Of a DNA stretch of 64,000 nucleotides, positions 38,407-43,897 are shown in pieces. The translations under genes and the position numbers were made by a program. The stretch spans positions 124,001 to 188,000 of the IMG/VR virus record IMGVR_UViG_3300047994_000374; one strand, given 5' to 3'. The first letter of the stretch is position 1; every line of letters starts with the position of its first letter. The notes below the pieces were generated by a model, which saw only the letters and a program-made list of their open reading frames with translations, made no database searches and was not told the origin of the DNA.

Positions 38407-38691
38407 TTATAAAAATGCCTTTATCGACATATACTTTTCTAAAATACGATCGGCGAGATCACAAGCTTCTTTTATATTATTAAAGATAATGGGTGATGGA
38501 AGTAATTGGTTAGTTGGTTCAAATTCACGATAAAATTTAATACTCCATCTGTCGCTTATACCAAAATGCTGGACAACAATAGCAAATGGCTGTGATTCTA
38601 TTAAAAATGAACGACTATAAATGATGCGGATTTGTTCATCGATACCAGATCCACTCCATTTATGCCAATCTGTTAAATTTATTTTCCCCAT
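38407..38691 (-). CDS. Tandem paralogue B3 with shared C-terminal motif
   Basis: KINLTDWHK...; ends LEKYMSIKAFL*. Confidence 0.6.
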   Translation of the reverse strand: MGKINLTDWHKWSGSGIDEQIRIIYSRSFLIESQPFAIVVQHFGISDRWSIKFYREFEPTNQLLPSPIIFNNIKEACDLADRILEKYMSIKAFL

Positions 38692-39371
38692 TTTTCAACA
38701 AATATCTTTCTTGCCTCTGAATAAAGTTTTGATGTATTTAATTGTTTAGAACTAACTTTACCAAAATGAACTACTGGCACCTCTATTACTTTAGATGGGA
38801 TCCCTAATTGCCTCGCTAAAAATCCCATATGAGTGTCTTCGAAATAACAAAAATATCTTTCTGAAAATGGACCTCTGTCATTTCCTTCAATCAATTTATT
38901 AAATGTTTCTTTTAATCCGCCCAAACACCATCCTGACATATATGAGTTTCCGGGCAATACTTTATTTGCCTCTTGCACAAAATTTAAATCTTTATCGAGC
39001 TGTCCCATTGTTGGACCTACTATACAACCATCTCTAGCCTCTTTAATAATTACATCGATCCAATTTGTATGATTGCTTTTAACTCGCACATCATTATTTA
39101 AAAATAAAACATTAGGTGCTGATGCGACTTGAAACCCAATATTTGAAGCGCGACCGAACCCAATATTCTCATTATTTCTTATATAGGTAATTCTTTTATT
39201 TTTACTTAATTCTGCTTCAGTTTCGTCGGAGGAGGCGTTATCTACTATAATTATTTCCACATCATCTGGCAATTTAGACAAATCAGATAAATAACTTTTC
39301 GTAAAATTAACCTTATTAAAAACTGGGGTAATAATAGATAATCGTTTTCTCATATTGCTTTTAGCTCCCAT
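38679..39371 (-). CDS. GT2 glycosyltransferase
   Basis: SIITPVFN, VDNASSDET, NIGFGRASN, FLNND, YFED. Confidence 0.9.
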   Translation of the reverse strand: MGAKSNMRKRLSIITPVFNKVNFTKSYLSDLSKLPDDVEIIIVDNASSDETEAELSKNKRITYIRNNENIGFGRASNIGFQVASAPNVLFLNNDVRVKSNHTNWIDVIIKEARDGCIVGPTMGQLDKDLNFVQEANKVLPGNSYMSGWCLGGLKETFNKLIEGNDRGPFSERYFCYFEDTHMGFLARQLGIPSKVIEVPVVHFGKVSSKQLNTSKLYSEARKIFVEKWGK

Positions 39372-40033
39372 ACAAATTGATATACCTCACCATAAACTCT
39401 CGACTTTAAAAACTCTGCCACATGATCTGGAACAAGATTATAAGCCCCTGCAAATTCTGAACAATCTACGGCATTCTTTAAATTTCTTCGCATGACCACT
39501 TTATAACCACAGTCTTCTACCATTTCTTGTAAAGAGTTGTTTGTAAAAAATTTAATATGAGTATTGTCCAATAGCCCGACCTCTCTGTATGTAAATTGAT
39601 CATTCATTAGCTCACATATAATTCCATTGTACGATGCGTTAGGAATAGATATCCAAATAGTTCCGTTTGGTTTTAATAATGTCTTTGTTGATTTTAAAAC
39701 CCATTCCGGATCTTTTAAATGCTCCAATACATCGGCAAAAATTACTGTATCATAGAATTGCTTTCTTTGAACTAAGTCGTGAAACAACATTCCTTCAATA
39801 TCTCCATAATCATCCAAATAAGCATTACGAGCCCATAATCCCGCGACCTTACCGGCTTGCAAATTTGGCTCTACAATATCAACCGTACAGTTTAACTGTT
39901 CTTTAAGATATTTGGTCATTCTACCGTATGCTGATCCAACCTCTAATACTGTGCTATTGGGGGCTATATTTTTTAGTATAGTAGAATTAGAATTTTCTGA
40001 ATCCATATCTAAATCGAAATTATATTTACTCAT
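39350..40033 (-). CDS. Class I SAM-dependent methyltransferase (glycan-associated type)
   Basis: VLEVGSAYG, FADVLEHL.DP, ISIPN, GLLDNTHIKFFT, YQFV. Confidence 0.88.
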   Translation of the reverse strand: MSKYNFDLDMDSENSNSTILKNIAPNSTVLEVGSAYGRMTKYLKEQLNCTVDIVEPNLQAGKVAGLWARNAYLDDYGDIEGMLFHDLVQRKQFYDTVIFADVLEHLKDPEWVLKSTKTLLKPNGTIWISIPNASYNGIICELMNDQFTYREVGLLDNTHIKFFTNNSLQEMVEDCGYKVVMRRNLKNAVDCSEFAGAYNLVPDHVAEFLKSRVYGEVYQFVWELKAI

Positions 40034-41178
40034 TTTCTTTTATACTTTCCTCGATTTTTATTGGCGCAATGGGGGCACCAACTTCCTTTTTTTATAACGT
40101 ATGGAAATTGCTCCCATACATGTCCAAATTTACATTTCCATTTCAATTTTTGATTAGCGGCGCCGCAATAATCAGACAGGCATTTACCTCCTTTTGATTT
40201 AGCTATGTTCAAATATACATCAAAAGATTTTTTATCATAACAATTACTTAAATTTATATTTATATTTGGATAAGGTATATATATTTTATTATCTTTACAA
40301 AAATTAATTATTATGTTTCTTAATTTATTTAATGGAGTATTATTAAATAAATGTTTAATGACTATTAAATAAACGTTATATTTTTTACACATTTTTAATT
40401 TTAATTTATCATTTTTAATACAAGCGCTATTATCTCTTTTTTTATTTTTATAATGGAAAGTTCCGTTATGTTCGAAAGCTAAATTTAATTTTTCACAATA
40501 CCCATCTAATTCTAAATTGTATCCATTAGACTTTTTTAACCAATTAGGGCGAACATTGATAAATTTTTCTCCAAACATTTGTTCAAAATATGCTCTACAA
40601 ATTTCTTCACTTATATTATTTGTTCGAGAACATTTTGGGCACCAATGTTTATTATCAATTGCGCAATAATATACCATATAAAATATATGTTTGTTTTTGC
40701 ATTTAAATTTTAATTTTGATAAACTACCATTATATTTTTTAGATAAACAAATGCCACCCCTTTTTTCGGCATGTTCTTTTGCTTTTATTAATTGAGATAT
40801 TTGAAAGCATTTTTTACATCTAATAAAATCTTTGTCCATACCGTTTTTAGATTGTTTAAAATTAAAATTACATTTTAAACATTGCCATTTTAAAATATGT
40901 TTATTATCAATGTAGATCGTAGAAATGCACTTTACATTTTTACTTATATATTGATTATTTATTTTATTAATATCTAATTTTGCAATTCCAGAACACTCTC
41001 TGCACCATCGTTTGTCAAAAATACTTGATGGATCCATATAAAAAATATGATTATTTTTACATTGAAATTTTAATTTAGTTTTAATATTTATGTATGATTC
41101 AGATAAACATTCTCCATTTTTTTTATTACAAAAATTTAAAATTTTTATAAATTGCTTTTCCTTATTTACTGGACGCAT
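40030..41178 (-). CDS. Second zinc-ribbon repeat endonuclease-like protein, paralogue of 35319-36698
   Basis: G.CLS..Y repeats, WCP.C, SEEICR..., RP.WL, LELDGY..LAFEHNG..H. Confidence 0.7.
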   Translation of the reverse strand: MRPVNKEKQFIKILNFCNKKNGECLSESYINIKTKLKFQCKNNHIFYMDPSSIFDKRWCRECSGIAKLDINKINNQYISKNVKCISTIYIDNKHILKWQCLKCNFNFKQSKNGMDKDFIRCKKCFQISQLIKAKEHAEKRGGICLSKKYNGSLSKLKFKCKNKHIFYMVYYCAIDNKHWCPKCSRTNNISEEICRAYFEQMFGEKFINVRPNWLKKSNGYNLELDGYCEKLNLAFEHNGTFHYKNKKRDNSACIKNDKLKLKMCKKYNVYLIVIKHLFNNTPLNKLRNIIINFCKDNKIYIPYPNININLSNCYDKKSFDVYLNIAKSKGGKCLSDYCGAANQKLKWKCKFGHVWEQFPYVIKKGSWCPHCANKNRGKYKRK

Positions 41179-42292
41179 AATTTTATTATTTCGTGAGCTA
41201 TATTATCCCAGCTATATTTAGTAAAAATATATTCTTTATCAATATTCGCATTAATAATTTCATAATTACTATATGCCTGTTTAAGCTTATCGGCTGCTTC
41301 ATCTGTATTGGGATTAAAACATATGGCATTATTTTTCCCTTCCCAATACATACTTTTAGGATCTGCTCTCATTTCTTTGCCAGACACTAATAATGAATTA
41401 TTTTCATTTAAAAAATCTAATTGCCCGCCCCACGCAGGAGCAATAACCATTTTTCCGCAAGCAATAGATTCAAGTCCTGGAAAAAAAAAAATCCCTCACA
41501 GTGGCTTAAGGTAAAAGTACAATCAATGCTTCTATAAAGATCTGACATGTCTTCTATAAATTCTGTGTAAATTTTAAGTTCTGCGTGCTTTGGAAATTTT
41601 TTATTAAAATCAGATAGGCACTCTTTTAAAGATACATCGAAGGCTTGAACAATTGGCTTTTCTTTTGCCTTTAGAATTAAACATACGTCATCTTGGTTCG
41701 TAAAGGCTTTTCCATATGCTTCTAATATTCCTGGGATATTCTTTCTTTTATGATTTTGAGCCAAATTTACAAGTAATTTAAATTTCTTATTTGTTTTTAA
41801 ATCAATGGCGGTAGTCTTCTTATAATTTTCAACATTGATTCCGTGTGGTATAACTTTGATCGCAGAATATGGAATGCCTGAATTCATAAATACATCTTTA
41901 GCAAAATTGGTTGGAGCTAACAAATAATCGCAGGCTTTATAATTTTTAGCAAAACCTGATGGCAATACATTTTTGCCCTGCCACTCATAGCACCAGATTC
42001 CGAAACGATTTTTAGTTCCGTTTGAAAGATACATTGGGAAATTCCTCATTGCTGTATAGCTAATTTGAGCATCATATTCTGGATCAGGAAGACGTCCAAC
42101 TAATTTTTCTGGCTTATTTAATTCACAATAACCAATAACATGCGGTTTCAAATGATTTGGAATATGTTCAATGCCATCCGTCGAAAATAAATGAACTTCG
42201 TGTCCTTGTTTGATTAAAGCAGTTGCAATTCCATGCCCTACCTCAACCCAGCTATGCAACTTCCCTAAAAATTGTCTAATTAATATTTTCAT
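41166..42292 (-). pseudogene. GT4 glycosyltransferase split at a T11 homopolymer (41481-41491)
   Basis: KVIPHG, RKN motifs; a T9 allele would restore EGFFFPGLE (E-X7-E) and SIACGKMVIAPAWGG in one ORF. Confidence 0.8.
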
Positions 42293-42347
42293 GTGAAACT
42301 ACTAATTGTTTGAGATATATACATTATAGGTCCAAAGGAATAATAAA

Positions 42348-43196
42348 ATGAAAAAAGTAGGTCGTCCATCAATATTAAATATAACACAGAAAAAGGAAGT
42401 TGTCAAATATTATATCGAAAATCAAATGACACCAAATAAAATATGTAAAATTTTTTCTGTTTCAGAAGAAACAATTAGAAACATATTGATATCAGAAAAA
42501 GTGCCAAGAAGAACTTGCGCCGATTCTAAAAAACTAAGAATGAAATTTACATTCACAAAAATGAATAAAGATAAGGCTTTTTTATTGGGATTAATTTATG
42601 GCGACGGTTCAATAAGCAATAGGCAGTGCTATATTAATATAACTTCCGGTGATTTAGATTTACTAGAAAAAGCCCAAAATACATTTAAAAAATATGAAGG
42701 TGAATTTAAAATAGAACAAGTGAAGGGTAAAAAATATTATAGGGGTCATACCTATACTAAAAAACTGTGTGTGGAGTTATTTGATTTATTTAAGCTTACT
42801 AATAATAAGAGTGATAAATTAATATGGCCAAAATTAGATGATAAATTATTGCCTTATTTTATATCAGGATATTTAGCCACTGATGGTTGTATCACAATAG
42901 CAAAAAAAGATAATTTGTTACAGCTTATTTTTTATTCTTGTTCAGAGGGGCACTTGCAATCCTTAAATGAATACCTTTGTTATAAGACCAATTTGCCATT
43001 ACGTAAAATTTATAAACGTACAAAAATAAAAGGACATTTTGGTAAAAAGCCACTTTTTACTTTAAATTTCAATGGAATTAAAGCTGAAAAAGCTTGTGAA
43101 TTTATATTTGCCAATACTACTTCAGAAACAAGAAGTGATAGAAAGTTTTTAATATATAAAGAATTTATGAAATCTAAATATAATATTATTATTTAA
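42348..43196 (+). CDS. LAGLIDADG homing endonuclease with N-terminal HTH
   Basis: FLLGLIYGDGSI and FISGYLATDGCI motifs; opposite strand to neighbours. Confidence 0.85.
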   Translation: MKKVGRPSILNITQKKEVVKYYIENQMTPNKICKIFSVSEETIRNILISEKVPRRTCADSKKLRMKFTFTKMNKDKAFLLGLIYGDGSISNRQCYINITSGDLDLLEKAQNTFKKYEGEFKIEQVKGKKYYRGHTYTKKLCVELFDLFKLTNNKSDKLIWPKLDDKLLPYFISGYLATDGCITIAKKDNLLQLIFYSCSEGHLQSLNEYLCYKTNLPLRKIYKRTKIKGHFGKKPLFTLNFNGIKAEKACEFIFANTTSETRSDRKFLIYKEFMKSKYNIII

Positions 43197-43897
43197 GTCC
43201 AAAGCCATTTTCTAATTTTTATCAATCTCAAAATCATCTCTTCTTCTTGAGCTGCATTATACGCTTCTATTTCATTTAATTTTTTCCACCAAATTTCTTG
43301 ATCTGGTCGATTTTTCATTCGAGCCTCGTGCCAAGCATCAAGTGTATTTTCGGCGTCTTCTAATTTTCTTGGACGATCTTCATTCCACCATTTATGAAGA
43401 GCGAGCATCTCTAATCCAGCCTCTCTTTGATCAGACGATAATCCGCCCATATCATTTTCATTTTTTTCTATTTCATCTTCTGGTGGTATATAAAAATTGC
43501 TAAATTCATTATTCATAAAATTATTTAATATATTGAATAGGGCGTATAGAATTTGCTTATCTGAATCGCACCAACCATAATTGTAGTATTCTGGATTTGG
43601 TTTATTATTTTTTAATTTTGGTTGGCGTAAATCTAAAATATGATATCGATGTGATGGTATAAAATGACACTTAAACCAATAAATAGCATCTTTAATATGT
43701 CGTTTGGGAGCCCAGAAATATGTAGGTAATTGTTCTAATAGCCAGTAGCGAATTGGATAAGAAGATTTAACTTCTGTTCGCCAATCATCCCAAGTATAAG
43801 CTGACGAGTCACAATTAGAAAAGCCTTTTATTGGCAAGGCGTTTGATTTTGAACGACCCAATTCTTTTGGAGTTGGAAGGTGAAAAAATTTAAACAT
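43193..43897 (-). CDS. Trp-rich hypothetical phage protein
   Basis: 234-aa ORF behind TTGACT-N16-TACATT (43904-43931). Confidence 0.65.
   Translation of the reverse strand: MFKFFHLPTPKELGRSKSNALPIKGFSNCDSSAYTWDDWRTEVKSSYPIRYWLLEQLPTYFWAPKRHIKDAIYWFKCHFIPSHRYHILDLRQPKLKNNKPNPEYYNYGWCDSDKQILYALFNILNNFMNNEFSNFYIPPEDEIEKNENDMGGLSSDQREAGLEMLALHKWWNEDRPRKLEDAENTLDAWHEARMKNRPDQEIWWKKLNEIEAYNAAQEEEMILRLIKIRKWLWT

What the first reader, a model, noticed from the sequence alone, without database searches (positions are those of the whole stretch)
41481..41491. T11 tract inside the catalytic E-X7-E motif of the GT4 gene: possible phase-variable switch
Seen: GAG GGA T11 CCA GGA CTT GAA. T9 gives EGFFFPGLE with correct GT4 E-X7-E spacing and joins both ORFs; T11 truncates the enzyme. 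The usual EGFGLP is replaced by FFF encoded entirely by TTT, creating a slippery tract. Established: homopolymer phase variation of glycosyltransferases in bacteria. Inference: ON/OFF glycoform switching in the phage population. A homopolymer sequencing error is an equally simple explanation.
Basis: partly seen in the sequence, partly recalled or inferred. Interest (0 to 1): 0.6.

Follow-up and report, generated by a model that had tools for sequence, protein, structure and literature searches.

The report
Slippery T11 run breaks phage glycosyltransferase
A run of 11 T's, the longest single-base run in this 394-kb jumbo phage genome, really does split a conserved sugar-transferase gene inside its catalytic motif, and two other related phages carry the same break, so this is a slippage hotspot and not a sequencing slip; whether it acts as a switch remains untested.

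Summary
T11 (A11 on the + strand, 41481-41491) lies between the two glutamates of the EX7E motif of a GT4/GT-B glycosyltransferase gene (41166-42292, minus strand) and shifts the frame. T9 or T12 would restore it.

The run is not an assembly accident. Two samples and two assemblers give an identical T11. It is the only homopolymer of 10 or more bases in the 394-kb genome, which otherwise avoids such runs in coding DNA.

Most orthologues break the run (TTT TAT TTT, or TTT TTC TTT). Among the seven lineages with a pure run:
- three are T9, in frame;
- one is T12, in frame (EX8E);
- three are T11, out of frame: the window, L003 and L004.

The three T11 lineages have the same flanks and sit in different clades of the best tree. 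In all three the 104-106-codon C-terminal frame is intact and as conserved as in unbroken genes.

Best reading: a slippage-prone tract. The gene is off at DNA level in the majority genotype. Full-length enzyme is possible only after a +1 slip, by RNA polymerase (as in tssM1 A11) and/or in replication (phase-variation-like).

Read-level tract lengths could not be obtained, so switching is not shown. A conserved family-wide switch is refuted. Recent, non-adaptive inactivation at a mutational hotspot remains a serious rival.

The parts
41481..41491 (-). T11 homopolymer (A11 on the + strand). It follows codons E266-G267 of the glycosyltransferase and lies between the two glutamates of the EX7E motif. 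This is the frameshift site.
   Evidence: Identical in a second sample and in other assemblies.
41417..42292 (-). Upstream reading frame, 291 aa. It holds 267 native residues (the N-terminal Rossmann domain and the start of the C-terminal domain, up to EG), then FFFF plus a 20-residue out-of-frame tail ending at TAG (41417-41419).
   Evidence: Pfam Glyco_transf_4 at 4e-8. PHROG 2170 glycosyltransferase at 2e-20. 574 homologues, almost all 372-376 aa.
41166..41480 (-). Downstream reading frame starting directly after the tract: PGLE...LCVQ, 104 aa with no stop. It carries the second glutamate of EX7E and the rest of the donor-binding domain.
   Evidence: Weak Glycos_transf_1 hit. Its conservation relative to the N-part is normal for the family.
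41166..42292 (-). The whole GT4-type glycosyltransferase gene. It would be 374 aa with T9 or 375 aa with T12.
   Evidence: Intact orthologues of 374-376 aa. The model of the T12 orthologue is a GT-B fold and its nearest solved structures are GT4 enzymes.
40030..41178 (-). Conserved downstream neighbour, 382 aa, Cys-rich with treble-clef zinc-finger repeats (HNH-endonuclease-like PHROG 559). It overlaps the end of the GT4 gene by 13 bases and is part of the same gene cluster.
   Evidence: It is 52-56% identical to the genes in the same position in L003, L004, L005 and L126.
39350..40033 (-). SAM-dependent methyltransferase gene of the cluster.
   Evidence: Pfam Methyltransf_23 at 1e-20.
38679..39371 (-). 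GT2-family glycosyltransferase gene, the conserved partner of the GT4 gene in related phages.
   Evidence: Pfam Glycos_transf_2 at 3e-17. Synteny.
42348..43196 (+). LAGLIDADG homing-endonuclease-like gene on the opposite strand, immediately upstream of the GT4 gene. It is context, not part of the switch.
   Evidence: Pfam LAGLIDADG_3 at 2e-9. No such gene is called (no LAGLIDADG Pfam hit) beside the nearest relative's GT4 gene.

Best explanation
The T11 run is a real, slippage-prone tract that puts the GT4 glycosyltransferase gene of this jumbo myophage out of frame in the majority genotype.

Shown:
- The DNA as it stands encodes only a 291-aa truncated protein. It lacks the second catalytic-motif glutamate and most of the donor-binding domain.
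- The rest of the gene lies intact in the frame that one added T (or U), or two removed, would reach.
- The tract arose where the family's usual F-Y-F (TTT TAT TTT) became F-F-F.
- Once the run is pure, it is found at T9 (in frame), T12 (in frame, with one extra Phe) and T11 (out of frame) in different phage lineages.

Inferred mechanism:
Full-length enzyme is made only from the minority of templates or transcripts that gained one base.
- RNA polymerase slippage on the 11-T run could give U12 mRNA. This happens on the A11 run of Citrobacter rodentium tssM1, where about 20% of product is frame-restored.
- Replication slippage could give T12 sub-populations, which is phase-variation-like heterogeneity.
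Either route yields EGFFFFPGLE, the same protein form that a related phage encodes directly.

The result would be low or heterogeneous expression of a glycosyltransferase that sits in a GT4 / GT2 / methyltransferase cluster next to the baseplate and fibre genes. What it glycosylates is unknown.
For: - T11 is present and is the only homopolymer of 10 or more bases in 394 kb.
- The same T11 is found in a second sample and in independent assemblies.
- The genome otherwise avoids pure 9-mers in coding DNA.
- Two further phages, about 65% identical in protein, carry exactly GGA-T11-CCAGGA at the same codon: L003 and L004.
- These three lie in three different clades of the best tree.
- All three keep an open 104-106-codon C-terminal frame. 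Its conservation relative to the N-part is normal, with residual ranks of 0.29, 0.81 and 0.71 among intact genes.
- An intact T12 allele exists (L005, 376 aa) and pure T9 alleles exist (L014, L129, L134).
- None of the loci found by tblastn that hold the whole gene shows a break, so the family is under purifying selection.
- Precedent for RNA-level rescue at an 11-base A/T run: PMC4256274. Bacterial RNA polymerase slips on runs of 7 or more T (PMC6260861).
- No phage RNA polymerase was recognised in the genome, so host polymerase probably transcribes the gene.
- A second gene of this genome, a DNA methyltransferase, is also frameshifted at a homopolymer (A8), while its orthologues are intact and lack the run.
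Against: - No read-level or RNA data exist. Only contigs were available, they drop minor variants, and no contig showed another tract length.
- No in-frame allele of this phage's own gene was found among 5.8 billion proteins.
- Most orthologues break the run, and 6 of 9 in-frame FFF alleles have TTC in the middle codon. This suggests selection against the tract, not for it.
- Three of three out-of-frame alleles being T11 and none T10 is not significant (about 1 in 8).
- The AU test does not reject a single origin of the three T11 alleles (p 0.19), so independent recurrence is the best estimate and not proven.
- Whether the EX8E (FFFF) enzyme is active is unknown.
Confidence: 0.55

Rival explanations
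1. Recent, non-adaptive inactivation at a mutational hotspot. Once Y became F the pure T run became hypermutable. In three lineages a slip knocked out an accessory gene that was dispensable in that setting. The alleles are simply young null alleles, and any slippage product is irrelevant noise.
For: - Most orthologues avoid the run, and many FFF alleles are interrupted by TTC. This is as expected if the pure tract is a liability.
- The same genome carries a second homopolymer frameshift in another accessory-type gene, a DNA methyltransferase.
- No in-frame allele of this phage was found.
- The out-of-frame tails differ in length (20, 10 and 2 codons), so nothing is selected in the shifted frame.
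Against: - Three lineages have the identical out-of-frame length, and none has any further lesion in 104-106 AT-rich codons.
- There is no excess divergence of the C-part.
- No decayed copy occurs among the loci found by tblastn that hold the whole gene.
- The allele is the majority in two samples.
- At 11 bases some polymerase slippage is physically expected (PMC4256274, PMC6260861), so a true null is unlikely.
Confidence: 0.27
2. Programmed -1 ribosomal frameshifting. The ribosome slips back one base on U_UUU_UUC (the last seven bases of the run plus C) and continues in the PGLE frame, giving a fixed ratio of truncated to full-length protein from unedited mRNA.
For: - The zero-frame codons UUU UUC, preceded by U, form a canonical X_XXY_YYZ heptamer (read directly from the sequence).
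- A -1 shift gives the same EGFFFFPGLE product as the natural T12 allele.
- All three out-of-frame alleles need exactly this shift.
Against: - There is no T11-specific downstream stimulatory structure. The window has z -1.1 and L003 has z +0.4. The hairpins seen in L004 also occur in the in-frame genes L005 and L126.
- The GAGGGA just upstream is simply the conserved Glu-Gly codons.
- On so long a run, polymerase slippage is the better documented route (PMC4256274).
Confidence: 0.07
3. Sequencing or assembly error at a homopolymer. The true tract is T9 or T12 and the gene is intact.
For: - Homopolymers are a classic source of indel errors.
- The sequencing platform is not on record for the runs.
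- Only consensus contigs could be inspected.
Against: - The same T11 appears in the source-run contig at depth 41.7 made by a different assembler.
- It appears in a contig from a second sample and in a separate scaffold from another assembly.
- Two unrelated data sets from other phages give T11 at the same site, while others give clean T9 and T12.
- The second frameshift of the genome is at a run of only 8, a length that short-read platforms read reliably (general knowledge).
Confidence: 0.06

Closest known systems
Transcriptional slippage rescue of tssM1 in Citrobacter rodentium (A11 run), and the related Shigella mxiE / spa13 sites
   Same: - An 11-base A/T homopolymer inside a gene leaves the annotated frame truncated.
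- The missing C-terminal domain lies intact in another frame.
- In tssM1, RNA polymerase adds bases (10-15 A seen in mRNA) and about 20% of the product is full length (PMC4256274).
   Different: - Here nothing is shown at RNA or protein level.
- The run is poly-T in the coding strand.
- It sits inside a catalytic motif, so the rescued product carries an extra Phe (EX8E).
- The host is an uncultured jumbo phage.
- The out-of-frame state is found in 3 lineages and is not conserved across the family.
Homopolymer (simple sequence repeat) phase variation of bacterial surface glycosyltransferases, e.g. Campylobacter, Haemophilus and Neisseria contingency loci
   Same: - A homopolymer inside a glycosyltransferase reading frame.
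- In-frame and out-of-frame lengths are both found among related genomes.
- The downstream part of the gene is kept intact.
   Different: - Classical loci are mostly poly-G/C, and their tracts are conserved among strains.
- Their reversible switching has been demonstrated.
- Here the tract is poly-T, is absent from most orthologues, and within-population variation was not measurable.
Hypermutable polyG tracts in Campylobacter phages (Sorensen et al. 2021, Cell Rep 35:109214, as cited in PMC10877375)
   Same: A phage genome, not the host, carries a slippage-prone homopolymer in a gene, creating sub-populations with different phenotypes.
   Different: - Those tracts are polyG. From my own recollection of that paper, which I did not read here, they lie in receptor-binding or structural genes.
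- They were shown experimentally to vary.
- This one is poly-T in an enzyme gene and is untested.
GT4 retaining glycosyltransferases of GT-B fold (BshA, PimA, HepE, PglA, PBCV NY2A 3oy2)
   Same: - Two Rossmann-like domains.
- The EX7E motif in the C-terminal domain.
- Foldseek probability 1.0 with TM 0.64-0.73.
- Profile match to the EGFGLPALE stretch.
   Different: - Only 10-17% sequence identity to solved structures.
- The motif interior is F[Y/F]FPG instead of FGLPA.
- Donor and acceptor are unknown.

Membership tests
GT4-type glycosyltransferase (GT-B fold, Pfam Glyco_transf_4 + Glycos_transf_1) | N-terminal Glyco_transf_4 domain | tested here: met
   PF13439 at 4.4e-8, above its cut-off, on the 291-aa frame. 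PHROG 2170 glycosyltransferase at 2e-20.
GT4-type glycosyltransferase (GT-B fold, Pfam Glyco_transf_4 + Glycos_transf_1) | C-terminal Glycos_transf_1 domain with the E-X7-E motif | tested here: inconclusive
   - The motif is split by the frameshift. The first Glu is in one frame and the second Glu in the other.
- The spacing is EX7E only at T9, and EX8E at T12.
- The fragment alone scores below the Pfam cut-off (18.4 against 26.4 bits).
- Intact homologues carry PF00534 and align to EGFGLPALE of 5i45.
GT4-type glycosyltransferase (GT-B fold, Pfam Glyco_transf_4 + Glycos_transf_1) | GT-B two-domain fold | tested here: met
   This was tested on the T12 orthologue P0098, not on the window's broken gene. 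The AlphaFold2 model has pLDDT 91.9. The top Foldseek matches are GT4 enzymes with TM 0.64-0.73.
Simple-sequence-repeat phase-variable (contingency) locus | Repeat tract inside the reading frame, longer than composition explains | tested here: met
   It is the only run of 10 or more bases in 394 kb, against about 6.5 expected. Coding DNA avoids pure 9-mers.
Simple-sequence-repeat phase-variable (contingency) locus | In-frame and out-of-frame tract lengths among related genomes, with the rest of the gene intact | tested here: met
   T9 in 3 lineages, T12 in 1 and T11 in 3. The C-terminal frames are intact and not relaxed. This variation is between lineages that differ by about 35% in protein, not between strains.
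Simple-sequence-repeat phase-variable (contingency) locus | Tract length heterogeneity and reversible switching within one population | not testable with these tools
   All runs are kept as contigs only. No contig shows another length. No in-frame allele of this phage was found.
Simple-sequence-repeat phase-variable (contingency) locus | Tract conserved among orthologues | tested here: not met
   Most orthologues have TTT TAT TTT or other codons. Six of 9 in-frame FFF alleles carry TTC in the middle codon.
Programmed transcriptional slippage site (tssM1 / mxiE type) | A/T run of about 9 or more at the junction of two overlapping frames, with the distal frame encoding the expected rest of the protein | tested here: met
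Programmed transcriptional slippage site (tssM1 / mxiE type) | Out-of-frame genomic state conserved in relatives | tested here: inconclusive
   Three lineages share T11 with identical flanks. Nearest relatives are in frame with no run or a broken run. A single origin is not rejected (p-AU 0.19).
Programmed transcriptional slippage site (tssM1 / mxiE type) | Heterogeneous run length in mRNA but not in DNA, and two protein products | not testable with these tools
   No listed run that holds the stretch is on record as RNA.
-1 programmed ribosomal frameshift site | X_XXY_YYZ slippery heptamer in the zero frame | tested here: met
   U_UUU_UUC at the 3' end of the run (read).
-1 programmed ribosomal frameshift site | Stimulatory structure 5-9 nt downstream, specific to shifted genes | tested here: not met
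   Folding of 80 nt downstream gives z -1.1 for the window and +0.4 for L003. The hairpins in L004 also occur in the in-frame genes L005 and L126.

The most novel reading that the evidence does not exclude
The T11 state is not an accident but a selected, convergently evolved recoding site. In several jumbo phage lineages the glycosyltransferase would be deliberately encoded one base short. Polymerase slippage on the run would then set a low, fixed ratio of full-length enzyme (EX8E form) to truncated N-domain protein, as in tssM1. Together with the A8-interrupted DNA methyltransferase, this phage would carry a small set of slippage-controlled modification genes.
Probability: 0.15. Interest if true: 0.7.

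Novelty: new member of a known kind. Interest (0 to 1): 0.45.

Why it matters
Slippage-controlled genes are well known in bacteria, but experimental evidence in phages is, to my knowledge, limited to a few cases such as the Campylobacter phage polyG tracts. Three uncultured jumbo phage lineages, whose genomes otherwise avoid homopolymers, carry the same out-of-frame T11 in the catalytic motif of a strongly conserved glycosyltransferase.

If slippage does control this gene, large phages could tune or diversify a glycosylation function without extra regulators. Automatic annotation would then wrongly call such genes pseudogenes or split them in two.

There is a practical lesson as well. A frameshift at a long homopolymer in a metagenome-assembled phage should be checked against other samples and relatives before it is dismissed as an error.

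Tried and rejected
- DNA searches in the 'phages' collection found nothing, by megablast or blastn. By protein, the nearest cultured phages are Streptomyces phages at under 25% identity, so there is no cultured relative.
- An exact-flank pattern scan of IMG/VR for other alleles of this very locus found nothing.
- A scan for GGA-T10+...CCNG gave 36 hits, none at a glycosyltransferase site.
- Two protein word searches meant to enrich for other frameshifted alleles found nothing new: the out-of-frame tail region 240-291 and the C-terminal fragment.
- Read laying returned contigs only. It showed no indel, no other letters and no joints, and the tract is not covered in runs X5/X6.
- An NCLDV origin is not supported. 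There is no NCLDV capsid match, though that search rang nowhere. The baseplate wedge hit, the tRNAs, the gene density and the one-directional genes say tailed jumbo phage.
- An alternative genetic code does not explain the break. The shifted frame has several stops, TAG is a rare stop, and reading TAG as sense adds no coding density. No other code was used.
- A split two-piece enzyme with an internal restart is unlikely. The ATG at 41450 is not conserved: L003 and L004 have Leu codons there.
- Other homopolymer sites with long frames on both sides proved to be ordinary gene junctions, apart from the methyltransferase.
- No DNA was available for the window's nearest relative P0003 or for P0057.
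- For the tree and the conservation test only, the three broken genes were read through inside a script with XXXX at the break.

Full report
**1. The observation**

The window has A11 at 41481-41491 on the + strand. The gene is on the minus strand, where the sequence reads GAG GGA T11 CCA GGA CTT GAA.

- The frame that starts at 42292 runs 267 native codons to Glu266-Gly267. It then reads FFFF QDLNLLLAEKWLLLLRGAGN and stops at TAG 41417-41419, giving 291 aa.
- The frame that begins directly after the tract reads PGLESIACGK...LCVQ, 104 codons without a stop, ending at 41166.
- Removing two T (T9) gives EGFFFPGLE. Adding one (T12) gives EGFFFFPGLE.

It missed only that T12 is also an in-frame length.

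**2. Is it more than chance, and is it real?**

The window is part of an IMG/VR virus record of 394,192 bp (92% complete, 36% G+C). The T11 is the longest homopolymer of the whole genome and the only one of 10 or more bases. Base composition alone predicts about 6.5 A/T runs of that length.

In coding DNA the genome avoids pure 9-mers. Of 44 Lys-Lys-Lys tripeptides only 4 are AAA AAA AAA, against 18.3 expected. Of 10 Phe-Phe-Phe tripeptides only this site is pure, against 4.1 expected.

Six public runs, all moss metagenomes, hold the stretch. They are kept as contigs only.
- A 91-kb contig of the probable source run (depth 41.7, a different assembler) matches 39500-43500 without any difference.
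- A 635-bp contig from another sample (depth 5.5) spans the tract without any difference.
- The remaining two runs do not cover the tract.
- A separate 1681-bp scaffold of another assembly (L150) is 100% identical over 1503 bp and has T11.

A random sequencing or assembly error is therefore unlikely. The distribution of tract lengths in single reads could not be obtained.

**3. What the gene and the genome are**

The 291-aa frame matches Pfam Glyco_transf_4 and PHROG 2170 glycosyltransferase. The fragment after the tract weakly matches Glycos_transf_1.

A word-based search found 574 homologues. Nearly all are 372-376 aa, at 60-73% identity, and many lie on contigs of 200-500 kb. A profile of 32 of them aligns to solved GT4 chains, with SHCEGFFFPGLEALAS against SHKEGFGLPALEAMAS of 5i45. 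The tract therefore lies inside the EX7E motif, and T9 gives the canonical spacing.

An AlphaFold2 model of the T12 orthologue is confident (pLDDT 91.9). Its best structural matches are GT4 retaining enzymes such as BshA, PimA, HepE, PglA and a chlorovirus enzyme.

The genome is a tailed jumbo phage:
- it has a baseplate wedge protein;
- it has five tRNAs, dense genes and mostly one-directional genes;
- it has no NCLDV capsid match.

No close relative exists among cultured phages.

The gene sits in a conserved cluster: GT4, a 320-382-aa Cys-rich protein, a methyltransferase (in this phage) and GT2. The cluster lies next to very large genes of unknown function (no family match) and, beyond them, the baseplate-wedge gene.

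**4. What relatives do at this site**

Among 120 listed homologues the motif is most often EGFYFPGLE (53 cases). FFF occurs in about 15. DNA was obtained for about 60 loci. The usual codons are TTT TAT TTT.

For the FFF type the tally of distinct lineages is:

| State | Lineages | Count |
|---|---|---|
| Interrupted by TTC in the middle codon | L048, L065, L126, L131, L132, L133 | 6 |
| Pure T9, in frame | L014/L052, L129, L134 | 3 |
| Pure T12, in frame, intact 376-aa gene | L005 | 1 |
| Pure T11, out of frame | window, L003, L004 | 3 |

The three T11 loci come from unrelated data sets. They differ at many flanking positions but share GGA-T11-CCAGGA.

In the maximum-likelihood tree they fall into three different clades, with supports of 95, 84 and 97. 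Each is surrounded by intact FYF or FYM genes. However, an AU test does not reject a tree that holds them together (p 0.19). Independent origin is therefore the best estimate, not a proven fact.

The pure run is a derived and unstable state.

**5. Is the broken gene decaying?**

In all three T11 loci the frame after the tract is open for 104-106 codons of AT-rich DNA and ends at the family's normal C-terminus.

I fitted C-part identity against N-part identity over 6216 pairs of intact genes. The three broken genes show no excess divergence in the C-part: their mean residuals rank at 0.29, 0.81 and 0.71 among intact genes.

None of the loci found by tblastn that hold the whole gene shows a break or decay, so the family is under purifying selection.

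Hence one of two things holds:
- the frameshifts are all very young; or
- the C-terminal part is still expressed often enough to be selected.

If the three alleles did share one origin, the frameshift would have persisted through about 35% protein divergence with both halves conserved. That would argue even more strongly for expression.

**6. How full-length protein could be made**

Restoration needs +1 or -2 bases. Three routes give +1.

(a) RNA polymerase slippage.
- On the A11 run of Citrobacter rodentium tssM1, mRNAs with 10-15 A are made and about 20% of the protein is frame-restored (PMC4256274).
- E. coli RNA polymerase begins to slip at 7 T, and slippage rises with run length (PMC6260861).
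- No phage RNA polymerase was recognised in this genome, so host polymerase probably transcribes the gene.

(b) Replication slippage to T12, which would be classical phase variation. Phage precedent exists for polyG tracts in Campylobacter phages (cited in PMC10877375).

(c) -1 ribosomal frameshifting on U_UUU_UUC.
- I found no downstream structure specific to the shifted genes.
- This route is therefore the least supported.

All three routes give EGFFFFPGLE, the form encoded directly by L005.

That all three out-of-frame alleles are T11 and none is T10 fits rescue by +1. With three cases the odds are only about 1 in 8, which is not significant.

**7. A second case in the same genome**

Outside the window, at G000:C1:51882-51889, an A8 run splits a putative N6-adenine DNA methyltransferase.
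- The piece with motif AGTGSF matches PHROG 5172 profile positions 16-93.
- The piece with GNPPFG matches positions 93-278.
- Fourteen orthologues are single intact genes with both motifs in one frame and no run at that place.
- A7 would be in frame.

So in a genome that avoids homopolymers, at least two of the longest runs coincide with frameshifts in modification enzymes. This fits both a small set of slippage-controlled genes and loss of dispensable accessory genes at mutational hotspots.

**8. Verdict**

| Reading | Confidence |
|---|---|
| Real slippage-prone tract: gene off at DNA level in the majority genotype, one base from an in-frame form, full-length enzyme only through +1 slippage at RNA and/or DNA level | 0.55 |
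| Young, non-adaptive null alleles at a hotspot | 0.27 |
| Dedicated -1 ribosomal frameshift | 0.07 |
| Artefact | 0.06 |

The finding is a new member of a known kind (homopolymer slippage loci). It is of moderate interest because of the recurrence in three uncultured jumbo phage lineages and its position inside a catalytic motif. The decisive data, tract lengths in single DNA and RNA reads, were out of reach here.

Noticed in passing
outside the window: G000:C1:51882-51889 (= L130:1083-1090, minus strand); pieces at L130:1052-1351 and L130:520-1113: An A8 run splits a putative N6-adenine DNA methyltransferase (motif I AGTGSF in one frame, motif IV GNPPFG in the next). Both pieces match consecutive parts of PHROG 5172. 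Fourteen orthologues are intact and have no run there. A7 would be in frame. This is a second homopolymer frameshift in the same genome.
   Followed up: yes
outside the window: G000:C1:333703-333777 (minus strand): A tRNA with anticodon CTA (an amber suppressor, called tRNA-Pyl by ARAGORN) is among the five tRNAs. TAG ends only 14 of 414 long ORFs. Reading TAG as sense adds no coding density, so there is no sign of wholesale recoding.
   Followed up: partly
window 42348-43196 (+), and the 40-44 kb stretch: A LAGLIDADG homing-endonuclease-like gene sits on the opposite strand directly upstream of the GT4 gene. No such gene is called (no LAGLIDADG Pfam hit) beside the nearest relative's GT4 gene, where GT2 also follows GT4 directly. 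The 40-44 kb stretch has the lowest G+C of the window (28%).
   Followed up: partly
window 40030-41178 (-): A 382-aa Cys-rich protein with repeated CxxC treble-clef units matches HNH-endonuclease PHROG 559. It is nevertheless a conserved syntenic partner of the GT4 gene (52-56% identity to 320-326-aa genes in four other phages). Here it has about 60 extra N-terminal residues that repeat an internal unit.
   Followed up: partly
whole genome G000, window included: Pure 9-base homopolymers are strongly avoided in coding DNA. Lys-Lys-Lys is AAA AAA AAA in 4 of 44 cases against 18.3 expected, usually being broken by AAG in the middle. Runs of 10 or more number 1 against about 6.5 expected.
   Followed up: yes
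orthologue loci L048, L065, L126, L131, L132, L133: In-frame FFF alleles of the family place TTC specifically in the middle codon in 6 of 9 lineages. The first codon is TTT in 9 of 9 and the third in 8 of 9. This suggests selection to break the run. Ignoring shared ancestry, the rough binomial p is about 0.01 against 26% TTC use.
   Followed up: partly
outside the window: G000:C1:1-100000: The first 100 kb of the genome has a much lower density of ORFs of 100 aa or more (0.50-0.66) than the rest (0.87-0.97). It probably holds many small genes, and all but one of the tRNAs lie there.
   Followed up: no
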